Below are positions 14,505-51,384 of a stretch of DNA of 64,000 nucleotides, piece after piece (within the stretch, counting starts at the first letter, position 1; each line of letters begins with the position of its first letter). The stretch spans positions 124,001-188,000 of the IMG/VR virus record IMGVR_UViG_3300026484_000087; one strand, written 5' to 3'. Under the pieces are notes generated by a model. It was not told where the DNA came from and ran no database searches. It was given only the letters and a program-made list of their open reading frames with translations. The translations under genes were made by a program, and so were the position numbers.

Positions 14505-14556
14505 GATACTACCAAGTATCTAATTAAATAATATATAATTAAATAAAAATAGAAAG
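14505..14556 (-). promoter_or_regulatory. putative early promoter plus 5' hairpin
   Basis: TATATATTATTTAATTA-GATAC-TTGGTA-GTATC; recurs at 34189, 43516 and 51333. Confidence 0.6.
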
Positions 14557-14575
14557 TCAGTAAGGAAATTAATCC

Positions 14576-14742
14576 TTACCAACTTAATGTCTTTGTAACC
14601 ACATCAATAACTGTATTACTACATGAATATGTTAAGGTACCCTCTGGGGTTATATAGAAACTTCTTTTACCTAGAGCTTCATTTATTTCCTTTATAGATT
14701 CTTCTGTATATAAAACAGTATAACTACATTTATCTCCATCAA
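14576..14742 (-). CDS. virion RNAP beta'-like subunit, exon 2 (FDGDKCSYTVLY...KTLSW)
   Basis: Joining 15409 to 14742 gives GCA GAT T|TT GAT GGA GAT = ADFDGD; 55 codons in frame to TAA. Confidence 0.92.
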
Positions 14743-15408
14743 CGTTGCCTTCACATAGGTCGTTACTCTATGCAGTTCTCTTATGAACTTCCCCAGCTTC
14801 CACTGGGAGACGAGACTATATCATGTTCTTCTGACACCATATCAGTAAGAACCAAACCACTTCGATTTAAGCACTAGGTACGTGCACCCACTTGGGCCCT
14901 ACTCCCCGCTACAGGATAGTCGTTGAACATTACCCATATTATATATATATATATAGTAACTTAGGGTCTTAGCTGCTAAAGGGAACCTTAGGTTCCACGG
15001 TTGCCTATTATACTATTATAGTGCTGATATTTATAAACGTTTAGTTGGTTACTCTAAACTGAAATATCGAGGCTATATTAATATTGATCACTTAAGATCA
15101 TCCATACAAGATACATTATTATATCCCAGTAGTTTTGCAACTACTCTTGTTAAACCGTCATAGACTAGTTTCCTGTCTATTGTGGTGGTACAGCTTTAAG
15201 GTTTTCCAGCAATTCAATTTGTTATTCGACATGCTTCTCAGCATGAAGGATCAATTTATTTTTTAACTTAAATTTAACAACATCTTTTGGCCTTTTCTAT
15301 AAAGGCGTTAGTTTTTGTTGTTTTTATTTTAAATCCTATTAGTTTATATGTATAATTAATATATGTTTACTATCTATTTCATCCTAATAGTACCAGTAAA
15401 AAAAAATT
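14743..15408 (-). mobile_element. group I self-splicing intron (IA2-like), 666 nt, no intact ORF
   Basis: Exon ends in U and intron ends in G; P AATTGCTGGAAA (~15203-15214), Q TAGCAGCTAAG, R GTTCAACGACTA (14917-14928), S TGATATAGTC (14814-14823); P1 has a U-G pair at the splice site; P8 and P9 hairpins present. Confidence 0.93.
15274..15327 (-). pseudogene. probable relic of a homing-endonuclease gene in the intron P1 loop
   Basis: AGGA RBS, then ATA in place of ATG, then KTTKTNAFIEKAKRCC*. Confidence 0.4.
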
Positions 15409-16858
15409 AATCTGCTCCTAATCTATCCAGTTTTGAAAAATGGGGACTTAAGGAATTGAAATATGCCTCCGTTAATATAGGATACTCATATACTTTATCT
15501 TCTTCCTCCCAATCAAAACCAAGGATACTAACTGTTCTGGCTTTAACTGTCGTTTTAAGATAAGGTATGCTTGGATATATACCACCTAAACCAGCAACGG
15601 GGTATCTAGTTAAGAAACCAGGATATTTTTTAACATCTTTATATATTGCTAGATATATAAGCTCAGCATATGTTATTGGTCTAAGGTATCTTTTATCTAC
15701 ATCGTCTGGTATATCTAAAGTATTCTTTATAAGTTTTACTTTTTTACCATCATCATAGATAAGGGCAAGATAATAACCCTCAACTTCTATAGGTTCAGAT
15801 CTAAGTTCATCTTGTGCTAATTTATTTATAACACTATTAAGACCTTCATCAGATGTCCACATATCCTTAGTTTTTGGTTTTATATCAACGTTAACAGTTG
15901 TTAAGGTTTTCTTATCAACTAATCTGGCAGTATTGCTATGGATATCAAATACGTCACCAAGTATCTTTAAATTTAATTGGTACTTAGTTATAGGGTTAAT
16001 AGCCTTAGAATATTGGTATAAACCTATAACGGTATTATTAAAAGATATTCTATTCTCACTGTTAGTTAAATCATGTATTACCGATGGTATTGGCGTAATT
16101 ACATTTCTAGTAGAATCTCTTATTGCCCTTTTAGTCCATTTGTTCTGTATGAACTTTTTCTTTCCATCCATCAAAGATATAAAATGATCATATATTTCAG
16201 TTATGATAGTTTGTATTCTAAATCTTATAGGATCTAATATCGTAGCATCATTAGATGATGTAGATATATTCTCAAGAGCATTTGTTGTAGTTAGTAGCTT
16301 TCTATAGATAGCGTTAACTTCATCTTCACTTGGTTTACCTGCATCATCTACTATATAATCTCTCAAACCAGCTGGAAGTACTAAAAATCTATCTATTAAA
16401 ATATCTTGACTTTTATATTTCTTAATAAGTTTAATTTTAAATTCCCTAGCATCACTATTTCTAGTTTCTAATTTAAGTTTATCATATTTAGACATAAAGA
16501 ATTCAAAACCTGTTTCACCGTCATTAGCATTTGAGAGAACAAAATCAGAACTTTTACTATCCCACTTGGCAAAAGCTTTGCCTGACATAATGTCTGAGTA
16601 TAGTTTTTTTAAGCTAGCTATATGTTTATATATTAAAGGGTGTAATACTTTTATATGTAAATTTACATAACCGAATCTTTTATTTCTTTCTTCACTTCCA
16701 ACTCTACCAAATATTTCAGTAGAGAATAATCCATCTGGATTGAAGTTTTTACTAGATGATTCGAAGATGCTAAGATCTTTAACTTCACCTATCATTTTTA
16801 TTTGGTCTCTATTAAGTATTAATAAATCTATATTAAAAGGTTCCATTTTTTCTAACAT
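15409..16858 (-). CDS. virion RNAP beta'-like subunit (phiKZ gp180-like), exon 1; spliced product 538 aa
   Basis: PDGLFSTEIFG, VLPAGLRD, TRNVIT and TRYPV motifs; ORF stops at RLGAD inside the catalytic motif. Confidence 0.93.
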
Positions 16859-16933
16859 CGCTTTTCCTTTGATAAATATTTTGAATGTTCAATTAAACTA
16901 CAAGAGTATAATAAATTATATAAAGGATAAACT

Positions 16934-19900
16934 ATGGCTGATGATACAGAAATCGACTTAGATGACGATATAGGATTAGATGACGATGATATGGATTTCG
17001 GTTTCGAGGATCCTTTTTCTGAGCCCCCTCCTCCTAAGGATACTAGAGAAGCTGTTAGTAGAAGCATAAGTAAAGTTGGTAGTAGCTTCATGGATGAATT
17101 TACCGATGATAAAGTTGAAGTTGCTTCTGAAATGGTTAAAGCAAGTATTCCTAAAAGATTATCTACAGAAGCTAGCGGGTATGGATCAGTTGTAGACTCT
17201 TTTAAAAAGGATTTAAATACATCTGGTACAGAGATAAAGAATGCTGCTATACCTATGATAAAAGCAGTAGAATCATTTGTTCCAGAAGGAGGTCGTTTAG
17301 AATCGTTTATGAACCTAGCTAAAGAAAAGTTAGGTATGAATGAAGAAGAACGTACAAGTGAAGATATTGCAGCTGATGCAGCTGCTAGGGCTGCTGGTTC
17401 GGTAGCAGAAGTACTTGGAGAATTTCAGGATAAAGAAACGGCTAAGGATGCTATCAATTCCGTAATACAAAATAAGAAAGATCTTTCTAATATAGAACTA
17501 CAAGCTGGAATGGCCGGGCATCTTGAAGCAATGTCTAATTTTAACATAGATGTAACTAATGCATATTATAGAAAATCTTTAGAGTTACAATATAGACATT
17601 TATTTACTGCTAATGAGCAATTGGATATAACTAAACAAGGTTTTGAAACATTTAAGAACCAATTAGAATCTATTGTTGCTAATAGTGCTTTACCGGATTT
17701 AGTTAAAACTAAAAATTCTGAGTTTATGAAGCACAGACTATTAGAAAGAGCTGGAGAGAGTCTATTTGCTAGAACAGGGGTATTTGATAGTCTTAAAAAG
17801 AAATTAAGTGCTGAAGTACAAGGTGTAACTAGTATCATAGCTAATGGTATGACCGGTTTAGGTGATGCTGCAGATATGGTTAAATCTACTGCCGAAATGT
17901 CTGAGATGGCTGGGGGTAAAGAGGGCATGCTTGGTAGCCTTATGGCTGGTGGAGTTAAGGGCTTTGTTGGTAATAAGATAGGCGACATATTCGGTAAAAC
18001 TGCTATAGGCAAAAAAGGTATAGATTTAGTTAAAGATTTAACTATGGATATGTCCGGTACTTTTGACAATTTAGCAGAAAATAGAGAAGACGGATTGCTT
18101 AAGAATATATTTAGTGGTCTAAGTAGCTTTACATCTAATGAAGATGAAGAGCGTTCGTTTGGTATAAATAAAATAGATAGAGATGGAGTTGCATTATTTG
18201 ATGGTAAAGTACATACGTCTATAACTAAAATAATACCATCTTTATTATCTAAGATACTTAAAGAAGTAAGTTCTAGTAGATCAGGTAATGAGGAAGAAGA
18301 ACTTAGATTTGATTATGATACAGGTTCTTTTAAAACAAAATCAGATATATCTGATAACTTAACAACAAAGCTGGATAATAAGCTTTTGGATTCTGGTACA
18401 ACATTTAGTATCGATAGAATATTAAACGATATAGATAAAGAAATAAAACTTAATCTATCTGAAGAAGAATTAGCAGACATTAAAGAAAATATTTTAATGT
18501 ATACTATAAATGGTAAATCTTTAAATCCTAAAACTCTAGAGAAAAATGGTTTTTACGACGATCTTAATCCAGAGTTGGCAGATAAATTCAAAACAGCTAT
18601 AGATAAATACCTAAATGTTGAGGACGATAAATTAAGAGATACTAGGGTTAGTTTCCTTAATAAAGAATTAAATAACATTAAAACAAATGCTCCAAGTCCA
18701 CAAGATATACTTGAAAGCTATGATTCATCTGGAAGTATGGATGTTCTGGTAGATAAAGGCTTTGTTAAACTTGATGAGAAAACAGGTGACTATAAATTAG
18801 ATAAGGATAATTATAGAGAGTTACTTGGTAAGTCTGTTAGAAACATTAAGGATAAAGAAGAAGTAAAAGATAAAGAGTATAAATCTTTTGCTGAAAAGTT
18901 ACTAGCTGATAAAATGAAGAAAGCTGGAATATCTAAGGACGAAGAATCTGTTACAAATGAACCATCTAGTAATACAGGTAAGTTCTTTAAGGGTATTGCC
19001 ACAAGTGTAAAAGGGTTTAGTACAAATCTTGAACAAAATGCTATAGATCTAGTAGATGGCAAAAAAGATATAAGTGGTAAAATATCTGAATTAGGTAAGG
19101 GTACAAAAGAGTACATCACTGGCAAAAAAGATTTATCAAATCTTAGTTTTAGTACAGAAGCCAGCGATGACTTTAATCCATTAGCACCTATAAAAGTTAA
19201 GAGGTCTTTACTTACCGATTTTAAAACTGGTAAGGATTTTGTTAGTGGAATACATTCTATATCTGATGTTAAAAATATACTGGAATCTACTGATAAATAT
19301 AAAACAATAGAAAGTAAAATAAAAGCTGTTAAGAAATTGGCAGAAGAATCGGAAAATCCTAAAGAGTTTGTAGAATCTTTTAGGAAAACTGATGAATATA
19401 AAAAACTATCAACTAGCGGTAAAGCAGCGATAGATAAAGTTAGTGGTACTATAAGTACTGTTGGAAAAGCCATTAAGGAAGATGTAGAAAATACAAAAAC
19501 TTTTAAAACAGCTGAAACGGCAGTTACTAGAGGTAAGAAATTAGCATCTGATGTTGTTAATAGTAAGCCAATTAAAAAGATAACTGAATCTAAGATAGTT
19601 ACAAATGCTATTGAAGACTTAGATGGAATAAAAACTAAAGTTACTAATTTAGCTAATCTATCAGATATGTCTACAGTTGTAGAAGAGTTATGGGTAAAAG
19701 TTGAAAGTAAAATAGAAGAGCTAGAAGCATTAGATAAAAATGATGTTATAAATAAAAGAATAGAAGCTCTTAGAAATTTATCTTCAGATATAGAAAAATT
19801 TGAAGTAGATGAAAATAATATAAATGAAAGTAGAAAAACAGTATTAGGTTTTATAAGTACTTTAAGTAAATTACTATCAACAGCTATTGCCACGGATGTT

Positions 19901-22900
19901 AAAGATACTATAGTTAGTAAAGTATCTCCTATTAGTAAGAAGATAAGTCATGTTACTAATAAGTATACATTTAAGAAACCTACAATCGATGAAAAAGATA
20001 CTAATGCGGAAGAAGTTAGTAAGAAAGTAGAAAAGAAAACTACTAAACAAACTTATAAACCAAAACCGAGTAGAAAATATATTAAGAAAGAAGCAGGTGA
20101 AGTAATACCTGGTAAACCTACTATTATAGCTGGTAAGGCTTCTAGTTATAAATCTGCAGTAGTTCCTGATAGAAAACCTACATTTGATTTCAGCGATAAC
20201 AATGCTAAACAGGCTATAATTGATAAATTGAAGTTTACTAAAGGTGGACAGTATAAGTTCAGTTCTTCAGCGGATGTAGAGCAATTAAAAGATATACTTA
20301 AGTTACCGGCTATACCTGTTAAAATAGTTAGATTGTTATTAGATTTTAATTTTATAGGAACAATAGGTTCTGATAGCACAATGCCAGCATCATTTAGTGC
20401 AGCATTCGTAAAAGAGGTACCTGGTCTAAAAGATGACTATCTATTCTTAATAACTAAACAAACTTTAGATATGGCAGAGGCTAATCCAGAAGTACTTATA
20501 GAAATGATATCTCATGAACATGAGCATTTGGTTCAAACTACTGATGGTAGATTAAGATTTCCTCAACAGGATGAAAGTATAGCTGGTCACTACTACAGTG
20601 AAATAGATTTTGATAAAGATAAATTCAAAACAGCTACACATTTAATACCGTTTAAACATTACTTAGATTCTCCATGGGAAACAGAAGCATATAGAGAAGG
20701 TTACTCTAATGTATATGATTACTATATAGAGAATGGTATAATACCTGAAAAGACGACTAGAGAAGAGTTTATAAAACAAGCTCAAGACACTAACTTCAAA
20801 CAGATAAGAGACCAGAACAAAGTAATACTTAAACAATATGAGGATTTATTTAAACAGAATAATGCTCCATGGTATTATGATAAAGAAGGAGATATCGATT
20901 ATGATAAAATACCTTCTTTAAAAGCTATGCAAGAAACGCCTACAAGTTTCACATACGAAAGTCCAAATGGGCCAGATGACGGTGTAGTAGATGTTAATGC
21001 GGAACAGATTGATATTGGAGGCGATCCAAAAGTTGCTGCCGGTATAAAAACTGATAGAAAAGAAACCTTAAAAGATAAGCTATCTAGACAAAAAGATAAA
21101 CTTGTAAATACTGGAAAAGATATAAGTAAAAAGGTTACTGCTAATAAAACAGTAGATAAACTATTACATAAAAATAAAGATCTTACTAAGATGTCTTTTA
21201 GTACTGAAGATAATAGCTTTAATAAGTTAGCTCCGGTTAAAAGAGAAAATAGAATAGATAGTTTTATACAAAGTACTAAGGATACTGTTAAGGATACAAA
21301 GGATACTGTTGTAAACAGTAAACTATATAAAGACAGCATTGAAAAAATAAAATATATAGAAACATTCTTATCTAATAAAGTAGATAAAATAGTAACTCCA
21401 GATATTAAGAGAACAGTTATAGATAAAATAGATTCTTATGTTCTTGATAAAATGACAGCTCTTGGTAAGATAGATACTGATGATAAACGTAAAACATATG
21501 ATGGATTACAGAGTGCTAGGGATAAACTAAAAGCTATAGATGTAAATAAAAATACAACTAAGGATTTTATAAATAGTACAAAATCGGTATATTCAGATAT
21601 AAATAAATTTGGTCCGAATGAATTTAAAGAACTGGTATCTGATATAAAAACTAAATCTATAGATAAGCTTACTGAATTTAAAGGTAGGGTTGAAGATAAC
21701 GTTGCTATAAACAATATAAAAGATGATGTTATTGAAAGAGCTACTGACGTTAAAGAGTTTGTAGACAATAATGAAACAGTTAAAAACATAAAAAACTCTG
21801 TTAGTAATGTTGTTAAAGTTAATGATATAAAAGATAGTAAAGCTGGTAAGTTAATTAAAAAACATATTCCTAAAAGTTTTACTGATAGTATAGCCAACAT
21901 TAAATCTACTGTATTTGATGCTCCTAAGGATGAGAGAGTACATGAGTTCGATGTTAATGAAGAAGATAAAACTGAACAACAGGAACTAAAAGATATTCTG
22001 TTTAAGATAACTGATAGTTCTGATTCAGATAGTCTTAGATTAAATCTAAAAATATATTTGGAAAAAGTAAATAAAGAGATAGATAAAGTAAGTGACTTCA
22101 TTTCTAAAGATAAAGAAAGAGAACTTAAGTTTAGAGGAAGAGTAGATAAGTTAAAGAACATTAGTGAAAAACTATTTAATATAGACATTAATGAAAGTTC
22201 TACTATAAAAGATCTATCTAAAGAACTTAATGAGGGATTAGGTACTCTTATATCTGACGTTACGCCATCTAAGTTTAAAACTAGTAGCGGTCCAACGAAA
22301 GAAGAAGAGGATAAAGCTAAAGAAGAAAGTAAAGAAGATTCATTATTAGATATACTTGATTCTGATAATCCTATAGATGCATTACAAAGTAAAATTAAGA
22401 ATGCCGTTAAGTCTAAAATAAAAGGCTTATTAAAATCTGGAGTTAAAGGTGCTTTTAACTTAGGTAAAGGTATTATTCAGAGAGATATTGAACGTGGTAA
22501 AAAACTTAGAGCGTTCCTTAAAAAGAAACTATTTGATAAAAAGGATGGTTCACCTGGATTTGTTAAAACTAAACTAAATAAAGGTTTAAACTTTGCTGGT
22601 AAGGTTTTAAGAAAAGGTAAAGATCTAGCATCTGATATAAATGATAAAAGCATAAATGTAGTTAAAGCTGATATCAGAAATGGTGAACGTCTTAGAGGCA
22701 TGCTCTTTAAAAGTAAATCTAAAGATAATGAAACAAAACATGAAGAAGCTAAAACTACAGTAGAACCTATTGTCAAGATATCTAGTGCTACAAAAGATGA
22801 AAAAGTAAAAGAGATATCCGATAATGCTAAGGGTACAGTCAAAAAGAAAAAACCTATTAAATCTAAGAAATCTCATAAACAAAAAAGAGGAATAATAGAT

Positions 22901-26528: not shown

Positions 26529-26954
26529 TTATAAATCTTTTGTTACATCATAAGCATATAGTTTAATTATAAACATTATACCCATACTACTATTAAGTTC
26601 ATCTTTATCTGGTTCAACTAGATCTTTGAAACTACTTGGCATATGTAAACTGTCCACAGTTGCATTTAAAGATGTAAATAGTTCTTCAGCTAAGTCATCT
26701 ACATATAGTTCATTTACTATAAGTTTCAATTTAAGATTTAGAATAAATTCTAATTTTAAATCCTGATCATCCTTACTCTTCTTTATGTTATCCATAATGG
26801 TATCGATACCACTCTTATTAAAGAACATAATAATATTAACTTTAGATAAGAAGTTTATAAAATCCAGTATTGTTCTAGTATCCTTGTCGCAAGTACAGAC
26901 GTCCCTAATAACGCTTTTCATAGTTCTAACTATGATATCTTGTCTATTTTCCAT
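26529..26954 (-). CDS. hypothetical protein
   Basis: 141-aa ORF overlapping the upstream gene end. Confidence 0.65.
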   Translation of the reverse strand: MENRQDIIVRTMKSVIRDVCTCDKDTRTILDFINFLSKVNIIMFFNKSGIDTIMDNIKKSKDDQDLKLEFILNLKLKLIVNELYVDDLAEELFTSLNATVDSLHMPSSFKDLVEPDKDELNSSMGIMFIIKLYAYDVTKDL

Positions 26955-27624: not shown

Positions 27625-27709
27625 TTGTTTTTTCCTTATCATATCTCTTATTTTTAAGATATCAGTTGCCTACCCGTTGTTTGAACATCCATTATTTTTT
27701 ACATGTTTT

Positions 27710-28189
27710 TTATTCCTCCTTAACTTGGTTATTAATTATACCATCAATGATATTTTCTATATTAATAATATATGGCTGTATCTTCATCGATATCCAGTAT
27801 TTCTTTGTATCTTCAATGTTACTGTGGTAGTTATTGTATAATGTAACAAATTCTATTGCTATTGTTAGAAAGTCCAACCATTTCTTGTTACCATCTTCAT
27901 AAATTACATTATCCTTATTTGTATACCACATACTAAAACGCTTATTTTTTAATTTATTTTCTGTAATGTTATTAGCGTTAAATTCATCTATCTCTATATC
28001 ATTTATCATATTTGTTATAAGATCTATATACTCACCTATCGTGGGTTCTAAAGAATTTATTATAATGCTAGAGTTTGTTTTATATGGGTCCACTTTTACA
28101 TACTTATGTACACATATTAATTTTTTTATTAATGTTTTGCAGTTATAGCATTCTTTATTATAGAAAATCTTTTTAAATATATTTAACAT
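27710..28189 (-). CDS. hypothetical protein
   Basis: 159-aa ORF, AAGGA RBS. Confidence 0.65.
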   Translation of the reverse strand: MLNIFKKIFYNKECYNCKTLIKKLICVHKYVKVDPYKTNSSIIINSLEPTIGEYIDLITNMINDIEIDEFNANNITENKLKNKRFSMWYTNKDNVIYEDGNKKWLDFLTIAIEFVTLYNNYHSNIEDTKKYWISMKIQPYIINIENIIDGIINNQVKEE

Positions 28190-32735: not shown

Positions 32736-32795
32736 TCCTTTCTTTATCTTTAATCAGATAAATGTTATGGGTAAGAAAAAGAAATAGACTTTATC

Positions 32796-32825
32796 TTACA
32801 TATGATACCATGGTATCATATGTAA
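32796..32825. terminator. perfect 30-bp palindrome
   Basis: TTACATATGATACCA|TGGTATCATATGTAA. Confidence 0.6.
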
Positions 32826-32837
32826 ATATTATTTAAA

Positions 32838-34133: not shown

Positions 34134-34188
34134 TATGTACTCCTTATTGTTAGAGGTATCATCTAGGATACTTAACCGACATAACTTT

Positions 34189-34240
34189 GATACTGCCACG
34201 TATCTACATATATTATATATGGTTGAAAATAAGTGGAAAG
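34189..34240 (-). promoter_or_regulatory. putative early promoter plus 5' hairpin
   Basis: TTTCAACCATATATAATATATGTA-GATAC-GTGGCA-GTATC. Confidence 0.6.
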
Positions 34241-34296
34241 TTAGATGTATAATTATTAAACGCAATATAAATAATTGAATAATTAAAGGATATGAT

Positions 34297-36747: not shown

Positions 36748-36770
36748 TATAACCATATGGTTATACTAAC
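36743..36770. terminator. perfect 28-bp palindrome between convergent genes
   Basis: GTTAGTATAACCAT|ATGGTTATACTAAC. Confidence 0.65.
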
Positions 36771-37380: not shown

Positions 37381-37450
37381 TATTATTCCTTTATTTATTT
37401 AATCAATAAAATGTTATGGGTAATAATTGAAAAAAAAAATAAACATGATA

Positions 37451-38117: not shown

Positions 38118-38221
38118 AATGTCTCCTTCCGTAATAGACCATTGATTATAGGTTCTAACTTTTGTTAGATTATTTTAAATTACCCATAATAAAAGAATCA
38201 TTAGCTATTTGATTCTTCCCC

Positions 38222-38263
38222 TATTACTACTTTTATTATATATGGTTGAAATATATTCGAAAC
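38222..38263 (-). promoter_or_regulatory. putative early promoter
   Basis: TTTCAACCATATATAATA core shared with copies at ~34211 and ~41746. Confidence 0.55.
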
Positions 38264-38322
38264 TCAATTTTAACAGTTTTTATAGACTAAGTAATTTTAT
38301 GATAAAATATAAGGAAATTAAT

Positions 38323-39762
38323 ATGTTAGATAATGAAAAACAATATGCTGCTTGTGTGTATACTGATGGTAGTGCTAATAATATGTTGAAGATATGGGGA
38401 TGGGGTTCTCACGGTTATATATATGACATTAATGAAAAGCCTAAGGTTACTAAAAATAAGCCAGTTAATATGGTAGTTACTGACATAGGATATTTAGAAC
38501 CAGGAGAGTTGAAGATCAAACCAAATGAATTAGTTAATCCAGTAGTTTATTTAGATTGGTATGGATCTTACCGTAGAGCTGGTACAAATAATGTTGGAGA
38601 ATTATTAGCTATAATAGAAACAGTAAAAAAATTACTAGAACATAATGTTACTAAGATAACTTTATTCTCAGATTCTACATATGCTATTGGTGTATTTAAA
38701 TCTAGCAAAACTAAAACAAAAGAATCTATAATTAAAAACGTAGAAGCTAATCAGGACTTATGGTTACTTGCTAAAGATATAAATGATACTGTAGAAAAAA
38801 GTAATATAGAGTTAACTATAGAAAAGATAAAAGCACATAATGGACATCTTGGTAATCATACGGCAGATGATATGGCTATGCTTGGTAGATACAATTCTAC
38901 TAAAATAATGAATGATGAAGAGATTGATTTTACATTAAGGGAACCACAAGGTTATTGGAAGCCTAAAAATGAAAGACATCCTTTCTTAACAGCTAAACAA
39001 ATATTCTTTACCAATAACGATAAGAATCCAAATGAGTATTCTTTATTAGGTTATAAGGAAGAAAACGAGATAGGTAAAAAAATGCATATAGCCAACTTTG
39101 GTTTAGTTGTTTTAAAAGATAAAGATGAGACTATAGACCTTATTAAGAATACATATAATGAGTTACTGGGAGAACACTCAGTAGTGTCTACTGTTAGAAT
39201 GGATCTTTTATTTAAACCAGATAACTTTAAATATGTAGAAAGATATGGTAAGAAATGTTTAATGCCTTTAAATAAAAATAGAAGGGGTATAAGTATACTA
39301 GAAAAAGAAATAGTGGCTAACTCTATAAATCCTCCAGCGTTAGCTTATACAGCCTTAAATAACCTAGACAACCTAAGAGTTGTATTAAATGATTTTAACG
39401 CTCTGAAGGCAGATAAAGGCTATATAACAGGCAAAGAATTTATTGACATTACAGATATGTATTATACTACTAATGATAAAGGTAAAAATGTATTTAGACA
39501 GGAATTAGGTAATGATATTAAAAGTTTAAAATATGTCTATGAAGTAGATGATAAAAAAGCAGATCTTATAATTCAATTTGGTAAAGACATACTTGCTAGA
39601 AATCCTATGAAGAAACTAGAAAAATTAGAACCTAAAGTATATTTAGTTATAGTAAATAGTAACAATGTAAAGTTGGACTATTATACCATAGTTGATATAG
39701 AAAGTACAGGCGATCAATCTGTATGGAGTAATTTTTATGCAAAGACAGTTTTTATAAAGTAA
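38323..39762 (+). CDS. rnhA: RNase HI with C-terminal extension (phiKZ gp155-like)
   Basis: YTDGS, TNNVGEL, SDS.Y and KAHNGH.GN..AD motifs; AAGGA RBS favours ATG 38323. Confidence 0.9.
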   Translation: MLDNEKQYAACVYTDGSANNMLKIWGWGSHGYIYDINEKPKVTKNKPVNMVVTDIGYLEPGELKIKPNELVNPVVYLDWYGSYRRAGTNNVGELLAIIETVKKLLEHNVTKITLFSDSTYAIGVFKSSKTKTKESIIKNVEANQDLWLLAKDINDTVEKSNIELTIEKIKAHNGHLGNHTADDMAMLGRYNSTKIMNDEEIDFTLREPQGYWKPKNERHPFLTAKQIFFTNNDKNPNEYSLLGYKEENEIGKKMHIANFGLVVLKDKDETIDLIKNTYNELLGEHSVVSTVRMDLLFKPDNFKYVERYGKKCLMPLNKNRRGISILEKEIVANSINPPALAYTALNNLDNLRVVLNDFNALKADKGYITGKEFIDITDMYYTTNDKGKNVFRQELGNDIKSLKYVYEVDDKKADLIIQFGKDILARNPMKKLEKLEPKVYLVIVNSNNVKLDYYTIVDIESTGDQSVWSNFYAKTVFIK

Positions 39763-39791
39763 GAGTAGTATAGCATATGCTATACTACTCT
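39762..39791. terminator. perfect 30-bp palindrome between convergent genes
   Basis: AGAGTAGTATAGCAT|ATGCTATACTACTCT. Confidence 0.65.
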
Positions 39792-40052: not shown

Positions 40053-40122
40053 ATTTTCTCTCCTTTAATCAGATAAATGTTATGGGTAAAAAAATAAATA
40101 GAGTAGAAACTACTCTATCTTA

Positions 40123-40719: not shown

Positions 40720-40798
40720 TATGTTCTCCTTAAATTACCCATAATATATTTTGTTACTTAAAACTAAAAAATAACAGATACCAAATTGGTACCTATTA

Positions 40799-41050
40799 TT
40801 AAAGATACTTAGACAATCTGTCTAACTCTTTTCTATATGACTCGATCTTAGCTGCTTTCTCTCTAGCGTCTTCAATAACCCTTTCCATATTTATGCCAAC
40901 TATATGTTTGGCTGACAATAATGATTGAGTATTTATTGAAAATATCTCAAACATATATTCACTATTTATCCTAGAATAAATTCTAGAATATACATATTTG
41001 CGTCTATCTTTTTTATTTAATCTAACTCTTTTATTTAATTTAAGCATCAT
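40799..41050 (-). CDS. hypothetical protein
   Basis: 83 aa; overlaps the upstream stop codon. Confidence 0.6.
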   Translation of the reverse strand: MMLKLNKRVRLNKKDRRKYVYSRIYSRINSEYMFEIFSINTQSLLSAKHIVGINMERVIEDAREKAAKIESYRKELDRLSKYL

Positions 41051-41444: not shown

Positions 41445-41477
41445 TTTAGTTCCTTATTTATTTTTTAATAATTACCA

Positions 41478-41567
41478 TTAATTGATATAGGAAATTATTT
41501 CTTTTAGAATATCTTTTAATAAAGATATCAACACAGTTCTTAAAAGAGATATTAAAAACTTTCTCAT
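41478..41567 (-). CDS. 29-aa amphipathic peptide MRKFLISLLRTVLISLLKDILKEIISYIN
   Basis: AGGA RBS 6 nt before ATG; not in the ORF track. Confidence 0.45.
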   Translation of the reverse strand: MRKFLISLLRTVLISLLKDILKEIISYIN

Positions 41568-41587
41568 GTGGATTCCTAGTCAAATTT

Positions 41588-41740
41588 TACAGTATGGTAC
41601 CGTCAGTACCATACTGTAGTCATTTGTTTATTTCTAGTTAATCCATCGAACTAAATCGATCCACCATATTAAATGGTCCATTCACTAACGATACGTATAC
41701 CGTAAATGATGGTTCACAGTAATTACAACTGCAAACTCTA
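41588..41740 (-). ncRNA. candidate small RNA (~150 nt)
   Basis: Bounded by the promoter motif and a 13-bp-stem hairpin; four internal hairpins; no credible ORF. Confidence 0.5.
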
Positions 41741-41774
41741 ATTATATTATATATGGTTGAAAAAAAATGGAAAC
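41734..41774 (-). promoter_or_regulatory. putative early promoter
   Basis: TTTCAACCATATATAATATAATTAG. Confidence 0.55.
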
Positions 41775-41775
41775 T

Positions 41776-41804
41776 CAACTTAGAGCATTTAATGCTCTAA
41801 GTTG
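41776..41804. terminator. hairpin after the 41810-42475 gene
   Basis: CAACTTAGAGCATT-T-AATGCTCTAAGTTG. Confidence 0.6.
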
Positions 41805-41809: not shown

Positions 41810-42475
41810 TTACCTTTTTTTCTCTGTACCAGATAACAAAGCCACAGAATTAAATTTAAAATCCAATAAAAGTTTATCTTGTCTATGGTAGTAGTATTCT
41901 GTTTTCTTAACAGCTAATATGTTACTTTCACGACTAAAATGATCTTCATTGAAATCTACACCTAGATACTCTGCTCGATTTTTCTCAACTTCCATGTTTA
42001 AGAAATATATTTTTCTATAGATTTCGTACCTAGTCAATTTTGGTTGTTTATAGTAGATGCTGTTTGATTTAGATCTGGTCCATATAATATCCATTTCATT
42101 GTTGGTTTTTATACTTGGGTAGATATCTACGAACCTTTCAGCCAATTTACCAAAATTATCTAAATGAATCTCTGGCATATCTATATAGAATCTACAGTTA
42201 TTCTCTAGAATAAAACTATTTATTATCTTAACTATGTCATCTTTTGATCTGGCTTCAAGCACAGTATAATTTACATTTTTAAGCTTACCAAATGTTCTTA
42301 TATCATCAGCTTTGGCACATGCTTGCTTTATGGCTTCTGCTGTTTCCTCACATGTTATGAAGATGGAGTTATAACTTGTACCACTGGTTTGTTCTGTTAT
42401 AAATAACCTAATAAGCTCGGTTGTTTTACCGCTTCTTGCTTTACCTACTATACATTTTATTTTATTCTTTTCCAT
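41810..42475 (-). CDS. small P-loop NTPase-like protein
   Basis: GKARSGKT Walker A, IFITCEE, FYID. Confidence 0.6.
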   Translation of the reverse strand: MEKNKIKCIVGKARSGKTTELIRLFITEQTSGTSYNSIFITCEETAEAIKQACAKADDIRTFGKLKNVNYTVLEARSKDDIVKIINSFILENNCRFYIDMPEIHLDNFGKLAERFVDIYPSIKTNNEMDIIWTRSKSNSIYYKQPKLTRYEIYRKIYFLNMEVEKNRAEYLGVDFNEDHFSRESNILAVKKTEYYYHRQDKLLLDFKFNSVALLSGTEKKR

Positions 42476-42493: not shown

Positions 42494-43087
42494 TTAAATT
42501 TCTACCATTAATGCTTTATCTGTATCTTTAAAATACACTTCAGCTCCATTAAACCACTTATCTATTAGATCTATTTCTTCACATATATCATCATATGTTA
42601 ATATAAGATCTTTATCACTAAACATATTAGTTTTATATAGCCCAATATCATTCATGAAGAATGTATCACCTCTAGCGTTAATAACCTTAGCATAGATTTT
42701 ATCATTCTTTCTAAGGTAAGACTCTGAATAATAATAGATTCCATAGATGTTAAATTCATTTACATTTCTGGTTTGAGGTTTAACCTTAATGTATATGTTA
42801 TCAAAACTGGTTTTAGTAATGGATGCTATGCTACATTTAACTTTAGCCAAATTACTACCACCACTACCTATGACATGTTTTATTTCAATAGTAGGTACAT
42901 AAATAGTAAAATTCAACTTAGGTCTGCCAATAAACTTTGTTGGTAAAAATACATAACCATCAAATTGTGCCAAATGTACTTTAAATGCTCTAAGTTCCTT
43001 TTCAGCCAACTCAAGGTTTCTATCCTCATGGACAGGATACGAATTAAACATTCGTATATCGTCTTTATCTTTTAAAATGTTGGACAT
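42494..43087 (-). CDS. KH-domain protein
   Basis: VP..EIKHVIGSGGSNLAKVK matches the KH GxxG loop. Confidence 0.55.
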   Translation of the reverse strand: MSNILKDKDDIRMFNSYPVHEDRNLELAEKELRAFKVHLAQFDGYVFLPTKFIGRPKLNFTIYVPTIEIKHVIGSGGSNLAKVKCSIASITKTSFDNIYIKVKPQTRNVNEFNIYGIYYYSESYLRKNDKIYAKVINARGDTFFMNDIGLYKTNMFSDKDLILTYDDICEEIDLIDKWFNGAEVYFKDTDKALMVEI

Positions 43088-43491
43088 TATAAGTACTCCA
43101 TCTTTGTATTTTCAGATATAGTTATGCCTTTATGCTCATATATGTTTTCTAATGTATCTGTAAAATCTGTATCAATATATGCTAAGTTATCGATATGCGA
43201 TTCCTTAAGTTCAGCAACAACATCTGCATCTAGAACGATGATCTTTTTATCCTCATCAACTTTATATGTAATATCATGGTTCTTAAAGTATTTAATAAAC
43301 CATACAAATATACTTTCACTTTCTTTAACATAAAGTTCGCCTAATTCATTCTCTATTTCTTCTAATCGCTCATCGATATCATCAAGTCCATTTACATGAC
43401 TCTCATCTATGTCTAAACCTTTACATCTGATAACTTCAGCTTGTGCAAGTAACTCTTCTTCTTCTTTTCTTAAACTTTCTATTCTAGTCAT
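43087..43491 (-). CDS. hypothetical acidic protein
   Basis: 134-aa ORF, AAGGAG RBS. Confidence 0.7.
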   Translation of the reverse strand: MTRIESLRKEEEELLAQAEVIRCKGLDIDESHVNGLDDIDERLEEIENELGELYVKESESIFVWFIKYFKNHDITYKVDEDKKIIVLDADVVAELKESHIDNLAYIDTDFTDTLENIYEHKGITISENTKMEYL

Positions 43492-43515: not shown

Positions 43516-43560
43516 GATACTGCCATGTATCTATATTAATAATATATAAGTAAAAAAAAT
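43516..43560 (-). promoter_or_regulatory. putative early promoter plus 5' hairpin
   Basis: TTATATATTATTAATATA-GATAC-ATGGCA-GTATC. Confidence 0.6.
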
Positions 43561-43564
43561 TAGA

Positions 43565-43596
43565 TAACTACTTAGGACATATGTCCTAAGTAGTTA
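43565..43596. terminator. perfect 32-bp palindrome
   Basis: TAACTACTTAGGACAT|ATGTCCTAAGTAGTTA. Confidence 0.6.
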
Positions 43597-45075
43597 CATC
43601 TTAACGATTTTTATAAGGTTATTAACCATGCCTATTTGATGGTTTATTAAACTATAATTAGTCATTGCTATAGATATCAAACTAGCATTATTATCTAGAC
43701 CAGTAGATAATGCATGTAATGTAGATTTAGTTATTTCAAACTTATTATCTTTACTAACAATATGTTCATGTAGCATATTAGTTTTTTCAGCTATCTCTTT
43801 AACTAAGCTATCTATTTTACTAAAATTAACCTTACCAAGTTTATTTCCTAGAATGGCAGTATCTTCAGCAAGCTTAGGCAATGAAGTTAAATTTGGTACA
43901 AGTTTACCAACTGGCATTCTATCGTTGTTAGAGTTAACATCTATAACCCCAGATAGATTATTTTTTATCTCATAAGCAACTTCTTCGGTTTTTTCAAAAA
44001 GTGTTTTCTTAGGTTTAAAAGATTTTCTGTAATCTTCATCAGACATTATCTTACTTAAGATGACATTTAACTCACTAAGAGAATCTATAATTAAAGAACC
44101 TAACATATGTTCATTTTTACTAAGTTTATTTTCAAGTTCTATTAGGTTAGTGTTTAAACCAATAACGACTGGGGTTTCTCTAGATTCTATACTAGCATAA
44201 CTTTTATTCTTAATAATTCTCTTAAGAGAACTAATATCACTTCTAAGTTGTCTAAGTTCTTTATTGCTTTCACCAGATATACCACTTATGGTTTCTGTAA
44301 CACCAGAGAATAATTCGCTAATAGAATTTAATCTATTTAAAACAAAGTTATTTATATTACTAATTAAACCATTTTCATTACTAAGCATATTAACCGCTTC
44401 ATCTACTGATTCAAAACTAAGAGTTTCTTCTAACGTTACTAACTGATTAACTTTTTCCATATTCTTTTTCCTTTTATCCCATACATCTTGTATGTTCTGT
44501 GATTGACTACCCCATTTAAGATTGGTAGCATTACAATTCTCTTTATTATCGTCCTTATGCATAACGACAAAACCTTTTGGACCAACTCCATGAAATGCAG
44601 TACAAACCAATATATGTACATACTCCATTTTACTTTTGGTGCTACCATCTTTAAAAATAGATACTTTAAGATAGTGTCCAGCACTAACACCTTTAGTAAA
44701 ATTACCTGTTTTCAATGTAAGTATTTCTCCAAGGTTACTCGCCAGATACTTACTAAATCCAGGTATAGGTTTCCATATTCTATCCATAGCATTTAATGGG
44801 ACAGGTATCCTATTTGATACATCTACATTAACTGGCAACTCAATTGGTATTATGTTTTTATGTATATAAGGAGCTTCCTCATCTACATATAGGCCATCAT
44901 CTGATAGACTAAATACTTTATAGTACCATCCATCAAGTTTTCTATGTTTTTTCTTAATAGCTTTAACAAGGTCTTTTAATGTCTTATACATTTTTATATA
45001 ACCAGTGCTATTTACCTTAATTTCTATTTTTTTATTAAGTATATCTGTTTTATAAATTGGTAAATATAATACCAC
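43594..45075 (-). CDS. NUMOD4/HNH endonuclease fused to a putative virion head protein; internal start at 44460
   Basis: WKPIPGFSKYLASNLG (NUMOD4) and VHILV..AF, VMHKDDNKENCNATNLKW (HNH); helical C-terminal part with SFE/SNE sites and its own AAGGA RBS. Confidence 0.8.
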   Translation of the reverse strand: MVLYLPIYKTDILNKKIEIKVNSTGYIKMYKTLKDLVKAIKKKHRKLDGWYYKVFSLSDDGLYVDEEAPYIHKNIIPIELPVNVDVSNRIPVPLNAMDRIWKPIPGFSKYLASNLGEILTLKTGNFTKGVSAGHYLKVSIFKDGSTKSKMEYVHILVCTAFHGVGPKGFVVMHKDDNKENCNATNLKWGSQSQNIQDVWDKRKKNMEKVNQLVTLEETLSFESVDEAVNMLSNENGLISNINNFVLNRLNSISELFSGVTETISGISGESNKELRQLRSDISSLKRIIKNKSYASIESRETPVVIGLNTNLIELENKLSKNEHMLGSLIIDSLSELNVILSKIMSDEDYRKSFKPKKTLFEKTEEVAYEIKNNLSGVIDVNSNNDRMPVGKLVPNLTSLPKLAEDTAILGNKLGKVNFSKIDSLVKEIAEKTNMLHEHIVSKDNKFEITKSTLHALSTGLDNNASLISIAMTNYSLINHQIGMVNNLIKIVKM

Positions 45076-45139
45076 TAATTACTCCTTATAATACATTATT
45101 TCATATAAATGTTAGGTGGTAAAAGAAAAATACCATTAG

Positions 45140-45165
45140 GTTAGATGTGCCATGGCACATCTAAC
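45140..45165. terminator. perfect 26-bp palindrome
   Basis: GTTAGATGTGCCA|TGGCACATCTAAC. Confidence 0.55.
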
Positions 45166-45246
45166 ATTATTTCTTAAGTTAATAAATATTGCATGACAAT
45201 AGTGTATTGCTATCATTATCAATTTGATATTTAAGCTTATACTTTA

Positions 45247-46103: not shown

Positions 46104-46114
46104 AATAATCCCCT

Positions 46115-48550: not shown

Positions 48551-48558
48551 TCTATCTC

Positions 48559-49676: not shown

Positions 49677-49722
49677 TTTCTACTCCTATTTTTTTATTTA
49701 CATTATACATAATACATTATCT

Positions 49723-50127
49723 TTATTCTATAATGAATGCATCATCTAATGATTTGAACTCCATCTCACTAATTTCTGAACGGATGCTATTACTATTGCC
49801 AGATAATGAGATACATGAAAACGACCCATCAGTTTCATGTACTGATACGTTATAATTGTCACATTTTATATCCTTAACAGTTTTACCAGAAATCCATTTT
49901 TCAAAGAATATATCATTATCCATATCAGGATCTTTATCCACGTGTAATGTTAGAACATAAAGATTACCATGACAAAGCACCCATATCTCTTGTTCAGTTA
50001 TAACCATTTTATCTACATCAGTAGCACTGCCAATAAAAGTCTTATTACCATCAATAACTGTAAAGTTAACTGAATATTTAGTCTTTTCTACTTTTACTTT
50101 AAAACCATTTTTATTAAATTCTTGCAT
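49723..50127 (-). CDS. hypothetical protein
   Basis: GGAG RBS before MQEF. Confidence 0.65.
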   Translation of the reverse strand: MQEFNKNGFKVKVEKTKYSVNFTVIDGNKTFIGSATDVDKMVITEQEIWVLCHGNLYVLTLHVDKDPDMDNDIFFEKWISGKTVKDIKCDNYNVSVHETDGSFSCISLSGNSNSIRSEISEMEFKSLDDAFIIE

Positions 50128-50238
50128 CTTATATCTCCATTTCATTTATTTAAATACTGCTTATTGTCAGTATGTCTTATTTTACGCCAAGTTTACTATT
50201 ATACCAATGATTGTCATTTTTTTATTTTTCACTAGATA

Positions 50239-51300
50239 TTATAGTTCCTTATTTAAAATCTTAGTTACAATATTAGAACCAACCTCACCTTTTTTATCAT
50301 ATACTGATCTAGTAAACACATCACCAACTGTTTCAGCCTGTAAGTAATCATTAGTTAAAATAAGACTGCCTGCATGTTTAATCTTTTTTATATCACCAGT
50401 AAAGTAAACTGTCTTCTTATCCTTATGAAATAAAGCATACGTTGCAACAGATACCCATGCATGAGACCTATATTTAGGTATGTATATAATTACCACTTTA
50501 GCATTGTCTACTTTAGCAAGTATATCATTCTTAATCTTTTCTGAACTATCAAGATCATATGTTAACAATCTACGCTCCATTTGAAGTTTAGAATTGTATG
50601 TATATTTAGCCATGAAGTCTTTCTTATCATCAAGACGTTCTTGCATCTCTTTTCTAATAGCTAAGACTTTACCACATGCTTTCATAAACATATTATTAAC
50701 AGATACTTTACCTTCTAAATCAGCTCTCTTAATCTCAGCTTCAAGTTCTTCCATTCTAGAAACAGTACTATTTCTAATTGACGTTTGGCCATAGTAGAAT
50801 ATAATGGCATCTTTAAGTTCTTTCTTTCTAAGAACCTCATCACGCTGTTGATTTAGTTTAATAGCAAAAGCATCTACGCCCGCATTACTAATAATACTCT
50901 TAGCTCTAAATGTCAATACCGTACCATGACTATTGCTTAATCCAGTTGGCATCATACCAGTTACTAAATAATTCATTCCATAATATCCCTCAATAAGCAA
51001 TATTATTTCAAAATCTGATGGTTTTGTTTCAGGTTTAAGTGGTACATTGAAAGTTTCATATAGCTTAGTATATGCATCTATAAACTCAGTACCGCCAGGC
51101 AATGTCATTAGATCTGTGTAATCTAAATCTAAATGTACGGAACCAATCATTTTTTTAATATTATCAAATGTAACCCCACCACTAACTAATGAATCGCCTA
51201 TCTTAATAACATTAACTAAACATCTACCCGTGATCTCTTCCATACGTCTATTGCTATGCGTAGGTACCATAAAGTAATTTTCTGTTAAATCTAGTTCCAT
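50239..51300 (-). CDS. hypothetical protein
   Basis: 353 aa, AAGGAG RBS; first gene after the promoter-hairpin element. Confidence 0.75.
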   Translation of the reverse strand: MELDLTENYFMVPTHSNRRMEEITGRCLVNVIKIGDSLVSGGVTFDNIKKMIGSVHLDLDYTDLMTLPGGTEFIDAYTKLYETFNVPLKPETKPSDFEIILLIEGYYGMNYLVTGMMPTGLSNSHGTVLTFRAKSIISNAGVDAFAIKLNQQRDEVLRKKELKDAIIFYYGQTSIRNSTVSRMEELEAEIKRADLEGKVSVNNMFMKACGKVLAIRKEMQERLDDKKDFMAKYTYNSKLQMERRLLTYDLDSSEKIKNDILAKVDNAKVVIIYIPKYRSHAWVSVATYALFHKDKKTVYFTGDIKKIKHAGSLILTNDYLQAETVGDVFTRSVYDKKGEVGSNIVTKILNKEL

Positions 51301-51332
51301 AATGAACTCCTTGTTTATTGTTATATTTATTC

Positions 51333-51384
51333 GATACTGCCTAGTATCTATTTTAATAATATATAACTATAATAATGTTGAAAA
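51333..51384 (-). promoter_or_regulatory. putative early promoter plus 5' hairpin
   Basis: TTATATATTATTAAAATA-GATAC-TAGGCA-GTATC. Confidence 0.6.

What the first reader, a model, noticed from the sequence alone, without database searches (positions are those of the whole stretch)
14505..51384. Conserved promoter motif plus GATAC-N6-GTATC leader hairpin heading accessory operons
Seen: six minus-strand sites share YATATATWAT-N4-5-TAG (near 14530, 34215, 38235, 41748, 43540, 51360). Four continue into TA-GATAC-[TTGGTA/GTGGCA/ATGGCA/TAGGCA]-GTATC, with an invariant stem and a GGYA loop. Established: phiKZ early promoters have a TATATTA-like core read by the virion RNAP. Inference: the hairpin is a sequence-specific mRNA 5' tag (stability, antitermination, export or translation) or a promoter element.
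Basis: partly seen in the sequence, partly recalled or inferred. Interest (0 to 1): 0.6.

Follow-up and report, generated by a model that had tools for sequence, protein, structure and literature searches.

The report
Jumbo-phage early promoters with 5′ hairpin
An uncultured hydrothermal-vent jumbo phage starts each of its predicted early messages from one sharply defined promoter, and every such message would begin with a small RNA hairpin, a combination not found in the searchable literature on this phage group.

Summary
GATAC-N6-GTATC occurs 4 times in the window (0.06 expected). The wider motif ATATATWAT-N5-TAG occurs 27 times in the 206-kb phage record, always on the minus strand, and 25 sites are intergenic. 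The core is nearly identical to the mapped virion-RNA-polymerase early promoter of phage AR9. The genome encodes a virion-RNAP subunit. A non-virion RNAP subunit gene sits directly behind one site.

By the AR9 rule, transcription starts at the A/G of TAG, so the hairpin lies at the very 5′ end of the RNA. Seventeen sites carry the canonical hairpin. The eight other intergenic sites carry unrelated but stable hairpins at the same position.

Several facts point to an RNA structure rather than a DNA operator:
- Stem changes are only G·U-compatible.
- Loop length varies from 4 to 6 nt.
- Orthologous non-canonical hairpins keep pairing through compensatory changes.

The loop GGYA is fixed in sister phages while its first two bases drift, so something also reads the loop.

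AR9 has no such hairpin, so the feature is specific to this lineage. The most likely role is protection of the 5′ end, possibly with a protein-binding function. No RNA data exist, so the start site and the function are inferred.

The parts
14520..14557 (-). Early promoter: -35-like ACTTTCTA (14550-14557), core ATATATTAT (14528-14536), TAG start box (14520-14522)
14505..14520 (-). Canonical 5' hairpin GATAC-TTGGTA-GTATC; heads a five-gene unit whose first gene is 13939-14481 (nucleoside 2-deoxyribosyltransferase-like)
   Evidence: -6.1 kcal/mol, z -2.2
27757..27794 (-). Seventh site (core 27765-27773, TAG 27757-27759), inside ORF 27710-28189 and 115 nt upstream of ORF 26944-27642. It has no 5' hairpin here, but the site is conserved in relatives G001 and G002, so it may be an internal promoter.
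34204..34241 (-). Early promoter: ACTTTCCA (34234-34241), core ATATATAAT (34212-34220), TAG (34204-34206)
34189..34204 (-). Canonical 5' hairpin GATAC-GTGGCA-GTATC. It is followed in the 72-nt leader by an inverse hairpin GTATC-N6-GATAC and a CUCU/GGAG helix over the Shine-Dalgarno sequence. The gene is 32838-34133.
38227..38264 (-). Early promoter: AGTTTCGA (38257-38264), core ATATATAAT (38235-38243), TAG (38227-38229)
38186..38224 (-). Non-canonical 5'-proximal hairpin (14 pairs, -9.3 kcal/mol). Its ortholog in G001 keeps it with 2 compensatory changes and 1 one-sided change.
41738..41775 (-). Early promoter: AGTTTCCA (41768-41775), core ATATATAAT (41746-41754), TAG (41738-41740)
41712..41736 (-). 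Non-canonical 5'-proximal hairpin (9 pairs, -8.9 kcal/mol). Its ortholog in G001 keeps it with 3 pair-preserving changes.
43531..43568 (-). Early promoter: GTTATCTA (43561-43568), core ATATATTAT (43539-43547), TAG (43531-43533)
43516..43531 (-). Canonical 5' hairpin GATAC-ATGGCA-GTATC; heads genes 43087-43491, 42494-43087 and 41810-42475
51348..51385 (-). Early promoter: ATTTTCAA (51378-51385), core ATATATTAT (51356-51364), TAG (51348-51350)
51333..51348 (-). Canonical 5' hairpin GATAC-TAGGCA-GTATC. Orthologous sites in four related contigs keep the stem and GGYA while the first two loop bases vary.
   Evidence: z -2.9
43564..43597 (-). Terminator-like perfect palindrome (15 pairs) that ends the upstream unit just before promoter 43547
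41776..41804 (-). Terminator-like palindrome (13 pairs) just before promoter 41754
15407..16858 (-). Virion RNA-polymerase subunit gene (homolog of 201phi2-1 gp275 / phiKZ gp180), the presumed reader of the promoters. It has no early motif of its own and lies back to back with the 2976-aa virion protein gene.

Best explanation
These sites are the early promoters of a phiKZ/AR9-type jumbo phage. They are read by the virion-packaged multisubunit RNA polymerase. Each promoter has a GTTTCYA-like element near -35, the core ATATATWAT at -16 to -8, and a start at the A/G of TAG. Because transcription starts there, the GATAC-NNGGYA-GTATC sequence forms a stem-loop at the extreme 5' end of each early mRNA, with 0-1 unpaired nucleotides before it. 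About 10 A-rich nucleotides, the Shine-Dalgarno sequence and the start codon follow. The hairpin acts as RNA. Its most likely role is to shield the 5' end from 5'-end-dependent decay (RppH plus RNase E or RNase J). The 5' arm GAUAC probably doubles as the polymerase's preferred initial sequence, which would explain why the stem sequence is frozen. The fixed GGYA loop suggests that a protein also reads it. Shown here: the motif, its genome-wide strand-locked distribution, its conservation, and the structural signature. Inferred: the start site, the polymerase, and the function.
For: Promoter:
- There are 27 perfect sites, all on the minus strand, and 25 are intergenic, mostly 37-48 nt upstream of a start codon.
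- Only 2 intergenic one-mismatch near-misses exist in the genome.
- The core equals the AR9 early promoter, whose mapped G+1 lies 6 nt downstream. Here the G lies 7 nt downstream.
- A virion RNAP gene is present and lacks the motif.
- The nvRNAP beta' homolog (201phi2-1 gp107 / phiKZ gp55) sits directly behind the site at G000 62255.

RNA structure:
- All 25 intergenic sites have a hairpin whose first paired nucleotide is at position 4 or earlier. In 24 of 25 the energy is -4 kcal/mol or lower, against 26% of random windows.
- All 8 non-canonical sites are at -7.2 kcal/mol or lower, against 13.5% of random windows at -6 or lower.
- Orthologous non-canonical hairpins in the sister phages show 8 one-sided pair-keeping changes, 3 compensatory changes and 0 broken pairs.
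- Among 27 canonical hairpins in 6 contigs, the only stem changes are A2>G (5 cases) and C16>U (3 cases). All give G·U pairs. Their mirror-image changes, which would give A·C in RNA, never occur.
- The loop is 4, 5 or 6 nt long.

Loop selection:
- Loop positions 3-6 are G, G, Y, A in 21-22 of 22 six-nt loops, while positions 1-2 vary freely.

Protective logic:
- B. subtilis RppH needs at least 2 unpaired 5' nucleotides (PMC3997798).
Against: - No RNA data exist for this phage. Only DNA runs from vent metagenomes hold it, so the start site rests on analogy, with a 1-nt spacing difference from AR9.
- The canonical hairpin is only moderately stable (-3.3 to -5.9 kcal/mol for the 32-nt 5' segments). 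Individual z-scores run from -0.4 to -2.9.
- The canonical stem shows no true covariation, because its sequence is conserved.
- The consensus structures were derived from the same sequences they are scored on, which biases them toward pairing.
- Many canonical sites may share ancestry through duplication of the cassette, so counts are not independent.
- Simple protection does not explain the conserved GGYA loop.
- The promoter also resembles a sigma-70 layout (TTTCCA-16-TATAAT), so reading by the host RNAP is not excluded by sequence alone.
Confidence: 0.6

Rival explanations
1. The hairpin is a specific RNA tag. The GGYA loop on a GAUAC/GUAUC stem is bound by a phage protein (delivered in the virion or made early) that marks virion-RNAP transcripts for antitermination, translation control, timed shut-off or transport. 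This reading is compatible with 5' protection and is not exclusive of it.
For: - Loop positions 3-6 are fixed in 21-22 of 22 six-nt loops across six contigs, while loop positions 1-2 and the flanks vary.
- The canonical hairpin is weaker than the non-canonical ones (about -5 against -7 to -10 kcal/mol), as if it were helped by a partner.
- The full motif never occurs away from a promoter.
Against: - No candidate binding protein was identified.
- Eight promoters do without the canonical sequence.
- No Rfam family matches.
- Terminator-like palindromes close the units, which gives no sign of programmed read-through.
Confidence: 0.25
2. The palindrome is a DNA operator. A dimeric phage repressor binds GATAC/GTATC half-sites over +1 to +16 and shuts off early promoters.
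For: - The half-sites are perfect 5-bp inverted repeats spaced about one helical turn apart, exactly over the inferred start.
- The sequence, and not only the structure, is conserved in the sister phages.
Against: - The spacing between half-sites varies (4, 5 or 6 nt), which would rotate the half-sites relative to each other.
- Substitutions are strand-asymmetric and limited to G·U-compatible changes.
- The spacer carries an asymmetric conserved GGYA, always in one orientation relative to the promoter.
- Promoters without the palindrome carry other hairpins at the same place.
Confidence: 0.08
3. The sequence is only a downstream promoter or initially-transcribed element for the virion RNAP, with no role for RNA folding.
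For: - AR9 early transcripts mostly start GA(U): GA in 21 of 26, GAT in 14 of 26. This resembles the GAUAC here, so part of the 5' arm is probably a start-site preference.
Against: - AR9, with the same core, has no complementary 3' arm. Its mean folding energy is -1.4 kcal/mol, the same as the control.
- Non-canonical promoters differ after TAG yet all fold.
- Compensatory changes occur in orthologs.
Confidence: 0.07

Closest known systems
AR9 (Bacillus jumbo phage) early promoters read by the virion RNAP: AAATATATATTAT-(6N)-G+1 (PMC5312081)
   Same: - The core is almost identical (TATATATTAT).
- There is a fixed short distance to a purine start.
- Tolerance for core mismatches is extremely low.
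- Sites lie in front of early units.
- The genome encodes split multisubunit RNAPs.
   Different: - The start box is TAG, 7 rather than 6 nt after the core.
- A GTTTCYA element lies near -35.
- All sites are on one strand.
- Every transcript would begin with a hairpin, which AR9 lacks.
phiKZ / 201phi2-1 early promoters (PMC8244752, PMC11512511)
   Same: They have an AT-rich extended -10 plus conserved upstream positions (-20/-30, T-rich), a single dominant strand, and nvRNAP genes among their targets.
   Different: The sequence differs. The published motif searches covered only -50 to -1, so no downstream element is described. Proteins are about 30-40% identical to this phage. These phages were not tested here for 5' hairpins.
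5'-terminal stem-loop mRNA stabilisers (E. coli ompA and papA; references in PMC3997798; T7 gene 10 leader, from memory)
   Same: A short hairpin with almost no unpaired 5' nucleotides lies upstream of an unstructured leader and the ribosome-binding site. Structure matters more than sequence, as the non-canonical sites here show.
   Different: Here one sequence-defined hairpin with a conserved loop is reused on 17 units and is fused to a phage-polymerase promoter. Stabilisation has not been measured.
Lambda nut boxB / HK022 put antitermination RNAs (from memory)
   Same: A small hairpin with a sequence-specific loop lies in the nascent RNA at the head of early operons.
   Different: It lies at +1 rather than tens to hundreds of nucleotides downstream. 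No boxA-like partner or N-like protein was found. The operons end in strong terminator-like palindromes.
Phage N4 virion-RNAP hairpin promoters (from memory)
   Same: An injected phage polymerase is paired with a short conserved hairpin-forming sequence at early promoters.
   Different: The N4 hairpin is DNA and lies upstream of +1. Here the hairpin is downstream of the start, and its G·U pairs would be C·A mismatches on the template strand.

Membership tests
Jumbo-phage (phiKZ/AR9-type) virion-RNAP early promoter | Highly conserved ~10-nt AT-rich core centred near -10 | tested here: met
   ATATATWAT lies at -16 to -8 relative to the G of TAG in 27 sites. It matches the AR9 consensus and the review's rule.
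Jumbo-phage (phiKZ/AR9-type) virion-RNAP early promoter | Genome encodes a virion-packaged multisubunit RNAP | tested here: met
   Window 15407-16858 is a homolog of 201phi2-1 gp275 / phiKZ gp180, which was detected in virions by mass spectrometry.
Jumbo-phage (phiKZ/AR9-type) virion-RNAP early promoter | Sits in front of early units, including non-virion RNAP genes, and not in front of virion genes | tested here: met
   25 of 27 sites are intergenic and upstream of minus-strand genes. The nvRNAP beta' homolog lies behind site 62255, and a split RNAP beta gene lies behind site 12974. The vRNAP subunit gene and the 2976-aa lysozyme-domain ORF (homolog of virion protein 201phi2-1 gp276) have no site in the 75-bp gap between them, and no site lies on the plus strand.
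Jumbo-phage (phiKZ/AR9-type) virion-RNAP early promoter | Transcription starts a fixed 6-7 nt downstream, early, without host RNAP or new protein synthesis | not testable with these tools
   No RNA run holds this phage. The start is inferred from AR9 spacing and from the hairpins all beginning at nucleotides 1-4.
5'-terminal stem-loop mRNA stabiliser | Hairpin begins within about 0-2 nt of the RNA 5' end | tested here: inconclusive
   This holds for all 17 canonical sites if the start is the A or G of TAG, but the start is inferred.
5'-terminal stem-loop mRNA stabiliser | Structure, not sequence, is what is required | tested here: met
   Eight non-canonical sites have unrelated hairpins of -7.2 to -9.9 kcal/mol. 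Pairing is preserved in orthologs. Stem changes are G·U only.
5'-terminal stem-loop mRNA stabiliser | Lengthens mRNA half-life | not testable with these tools
   This needs half-life measurements.
Palindromic operator for a dimeric DNA-binding protein | Fixed half-site spacing and symmetric tolerance of substitutions | tested here: not met
   Spacers of 4, 5 and 6 nt occur. All 8 stem substitutions fall on the G·U-compatible side and none on the mirror side.
N4-type DNA hairpin promoter | Hairpin upstream of +1, formed by DNA | tested here: not met
   The hairpin lies at +1 to +16 (inferred start). Its G·U pairs would be C·A on the template strand.
Any curated RNA family (Rfam 15) | Covariance-model match | tested here: not met
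   No match at gathering score in the whole window. Only a chance-level hit (E = 7.4) appeared around site 14536.

The most novel reading that the evidence does not exclude
The canonical GAUAC-NNGGYA-GUAUC hairpin is a dedicated recognition tag that marks every transcript made by the injected virion polymerase. It would be bound by a phage protein that decides the fate of early mRNA, for example release from the early infection compartment, ribosome loading, or timed destruction at the early-to-late switch. In that case the clade would have an addressable 'early-mRNA label', which has not been described for nucleus-forming jumbo phages.
Probability: 0.25. Interest if true: 0.75.

Novelty: new variant of a known kind. 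Interest (0 to 1): 0.5.

Why it matters
How jumbo phages with their own polymerases handle early mRNA after it is made is largely unknown. This covers its stability, translation, shut-off and passage out of the early infection compartment. Published promoter analyses looked only upstream of start sites.

This phage offers a compact cassette of about 75 nt: promoter, 5' hairpin, A-rich linker and ribosome site. It is reused on at least 17 units. It carries a structural signature that can be tested by simple stem and loop mutants, and it offers a natural contrast (AR9: same promoter core, no hairpin). If the loop is read by a protein, it would be the first sequence tag specific to virion-polymerase transcripts. 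Even if it is only a stabiliser, it is a ready-made part for expression systems based on these polymerases.

Tried and rejected
- Exact hairpin in IMG/VR: 51 single matches, all in unrelated coding contexts without the promoter. These are chance matches.
- Relaxed promoter-plus-stem pattern: recovered only the sister contigs (G001, G003) and one more distant relative (G002).
- Distant relatives at 43-52% protein identity from the metagenome scan: none has this core. Their intergenic regions show other motifs. I did not derive their promoters, so the age of the hairpin habit is unknown.
- RNA evidence: only three DNA runs hold the sequence. Read laying was therefore not used, because contigs of DNA runs cannot show a start.
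- Generic sigma-70 scan: 113 hits against 107.6 expected, so it is uninformative.
- Rfam: nothing.
- A remembered resemblance of UAG-stem-NNGGYA-G to the tRNA D-arm was considered. There is no support from Rfam or ARAGORN, and it was dropped.
- phiKZ itself was not tested for 5' hairpins, because no explicit motif sequence was found in the papers read.
- Literature searches for a described early-promoter hairpin in jumbo phages found none.
Full report
**What is in the sequence**

The pattern GATAC-N6-GTATC occurs four times in the window, at 14505, 34189, 43516 and 51333. Only 0.06 matches are expected, and no shuffle out of 100 reached four. A seventh copy of the motif lies at 27765-27773 inside an ORF.

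**Genome-wide picture**

The window is bases 124001-188000 of a 206,244-bp virus record that is 30% G+C and estimated 77% complete. It comes from a hydrothermal-vent metagenome.

In the whole record, ATATATWAT-N5-TAG occurs 27 times on the minus strand and never on the plus strand. By a simple ORF call, 57 of 227 ORFs are on the plus strand. Twenty-five sites are intergenic and point into minus-strand genes, typically 37-48 nt upstream of the start codon. Only two one-mismatch cores lie in intergenic DNA, so the motif is extremely sharp.

An alignment of the 25 intergenic sites shows a further conserved element, GTTTCYA, at about -37 to -30. Several sites are immediately preceded by long perfect palindromes that score as terminators. 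There are 12 such palindromes in 36-52 kb against 3.6 expected, and two of them lie directly upstream of promoters 41754 and 43547. The layout is therefore terminator, promoter, leader, genes.

**What kind of promoter**

The phage belongs to the phiKZ/AR9 group with split multisubunit RNA polymerases.

- The ORF at 15407-16858 is about 40% identical over its full length to the RNAP subunit of more than 300 cultured jumbo phages.
- It corresponds to 201phi2-1 gp275 / phiKZ gp180, a virion protein. As in that phage, it lies back to back with the giant virion protein gene.
- The early promoters of AR9, mapped by dRNA-seq and primer extension and active without protein synthesis, have the consensus AAATATATATTAT-(6N)-G+1 (PMC5312081). 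The core here is the same.
- A review states that every RNAP-encoding jumbo phage has such an AT-rich ~10-nt motif near -10 in front of early operons (PMC7598289).
- The phiKZ and 201phi2-1 early promoters also have conserved upstream positions (PMC8244752; PMC11512511).

The targets fit this reading. The gene directly behind the site at G000 62255 is the homolog of 201phi2-1 gp107 / phiKZ gp55, a non-virion RNAP beta' subunit. The site at G000 12974 heads a split RNAP beta gene and has the same 45-nt leader. The virion RNAP gene has no such site.

I therefore read the motif as the early promoter of the virion RNAP. By the AR9 spacing, the start is at the A or G of TAG. This is an inference. 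No RNA run holds this phage.

**The hairpin acts as RNA at the 5' end**

With that start, the canonical hairpin occupies nucleotides 1/2 to 16/17 of the transcript. Seventeen of the 27 sites carry it. The other eight intergenic sites have unrelated sequences after TAG, yet all fold into a hairpin that begins within the first four nucleotides, with energies of -7.2 to -9.9 kcal/mol. Only 13.5% of random 45-nt windows reach -6 under the same rule. Overall, 24 of the 25 intergenic sites reach -4 against 26% of controls. The two intragenic sites score 0 and -2.9.

Relatives give the same answer. I found a sister phage in the same metagenome (G001, 110 kb, 79% identity in the RNAP subunit) and four shorter contigs (G003, plus L094 at 97%, L095 at 86% and L096 at 77% identity in the RecA-like protein). 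They keep the promoter and the canonical hairpin at orthologous and other sites.

Among 27 canonical hairpins in six contigs:

- The only stem changes are A2>G (5 cases) and C16>U (3 cases), both giving G·U pairs.
- The mirror-image changes, which a symmetric DNA-binding dimer would tolerate equally but which give A·C in RNA, never occur.
- The loop is 4, 5 or 6 nt long.
- Loop positions 3-6 are G, G, Y, A in 21-22 of 22 six-nt loops, while positions 1-2 vary freely.

Orthologous non-canonical hairpins differ between G000 and G001/G003 by 8 one-sided pair-keeping changes and 3 compensatory changes, with no broken pair in the consensus helices. One caveat applies: the consensus was derived from the same pairs of sequences it scores.

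The complete motif never occurs away from a promoter. It occurs in no other IMG/VR phage in a promoter context. No Rfam family matches.

**A natural control**

AR9 has the same promoter core and experimentally mapped starts. The first 32 nt of 26 AR9 early transcripts fold no better than random AR9 windows (mean -1.4 against -1.7 kcal/mol; 8% at -5 or lower in both sets). The polymerase family therefore does not need the hairpin, and it is a trait of this vent lineage. AR9 transcripts mostly start GA(U). This suggests that the 5' arm GAUAC is partly fixed by start-site preference. The 3' arm would then be fixed by the need to pair, which explains a frozen stem sequence without invoking DNA recognition of the palindrome.

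**Most likely mechanism**

A stem-loop with zero or one unpaired 5' nucleotide is the classical way to block 5'-end-dependent decay. B. subtilis RppH needs at least two unpaired nucleotides, and 5'-terminal stem-loops stabilise E. coli mRNAs (PMC3997798 and references therein).

The regular spacing fits a standard expression cassette. The hairpin ends at +16, about 10 A-rich nucleotides follow, then the Shine-Dalgarno sequence, and the ATG lies near +39/40 in 9 of 17 canonical sites. The hairpin thus sits just outside the ribosome-binding region.

I give about 0.85 to the promoter assignment, about 0.8 to an RNA-level 5' structure under selection, and about 0.45 to protection as the main function. 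The fixed GGYA loop is not explained by protection alone. A protein that reads the loop is the main rival or complement (0.25). A DNA operator (0.08) and a pure promoter element (0.07) are disfavoured for the reasons above.

**Limits**

- No start site is measured.
- The host is unknown.
- Gene calls are from a simple ORF rule.
- Canonical sites may be related by duplication, so counts are not independent events.
- The canonical hairpin is only moderately stable, with individual z-scores from -0.4 to -2.9.
- More distant relatives (43-57% identity) were not resolved.
- phiKZ itself was not tested.

The large protein searches were not needed.

Noticed in passing
window 32736-32837, 37381-37450, 40053-40122 (also G000 25.6 kb and 19.5 kb): A second recurrent upstream motif, TTACCCATAAC followed by T(T/A)ATTGAT about 25-45 nt before the start codon, occurs in front of genes without the early motif, including the baseplate gene 31866-32735. 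ACCCATAA occurs 6 times against 0.5 expected, and TTAATTGA 6 times against 0.2. It is a candidate middle or late (non-virion RNAP) promoter.
   Followed up: partly
window 34133-34205 (-); G000 113260-113334; G001 62484-62563: The leader of the phrog_3141-family gene and its paralog has three conserved helices: the canonical hairpin, an inverse hairpin GUAUC-N6-GAUAC whose arms could pair with those of the first, and a CUCU/GGAG helix that covers the Shine-Dalgarno sequence. It looks like a translational switch.
   Followed up: partly
window 41445-41738 (-): Promoter 41754 is followed by a leader of about 295 nt without a convincing ORF. The leader contains a 14-bp perfect hairpin at 41587-41619. 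This may be an early non-coding RNA. The G001 ortholog has a short leader instead.
   Followed up: partly
window 36743-36770, 39762-39791, 40096-40120, 40770-40800, 41776-41804, 43564-43597, 45140-45165: Long perfect palindromes (11-15 bp stems, 3-5 nt loops) act as terminator-like unit boundaries. Some are symmetric and could work in both directions.
   Followed up: no
G000 9899-12919 (outside the window; L134): The RNAP beta gene (phrog_3295) is split into 414-aa and 314-aa ORFs by about 670 bp that carry an endonuclease-like 83-aa ORF. This looks like an intron or homing insertion, as described for 201phi2-1 gp273/274. A 65-aa ORF overlaps its start.
   Followed up: partly
G000 62199-62255 and 12919-12974 (outside the window): Two RNAP subunit genes share an identical leader of about 45 nt, including the GGUAC wobble variant of the hairpin. 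This suggests matched expression of the subunits.
   Followed up: no
window 27757-27794: The intragenic copy of the promoter is conserved in G001 (site at 58023) and even in the distant G002 (site at 5111), where a 7-bp hairpin follows it. It may be a real internal promoter for ORF 26944-27642.
   Followed up: partly
window 16934-25864 (+), 54922-61179 (-), 6105-10292 (-): There are three giant ORFs of 2976, 2085 and 1395 aa. The first carries a phage lysozyme domain near residue 2700 and is the neighbour of the virion RNAP gene, like the cell-puncturing virion protein of 201phi2-1.
   Followed up: no
window 13939-14481 (-) and 43594-45075 (-): The first gene of the early unit at 14536 is nucleoside 2-deoxyribosyltransferase-like, with a weak match below the Pfam cut-off. 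A 493-aa HNH endonuclease lies just upstream of promoter 43547.
   Followed up: no
whole record; L093-L097: G000 and the sister phage G001 (79% identity in the RNAP subunit) come from the same vent metagenome. Further variants at 77-97% identity occur in neighbouring samples of that project. No cultured phage is closer than about 40% protein identity.
   Followed up: partly
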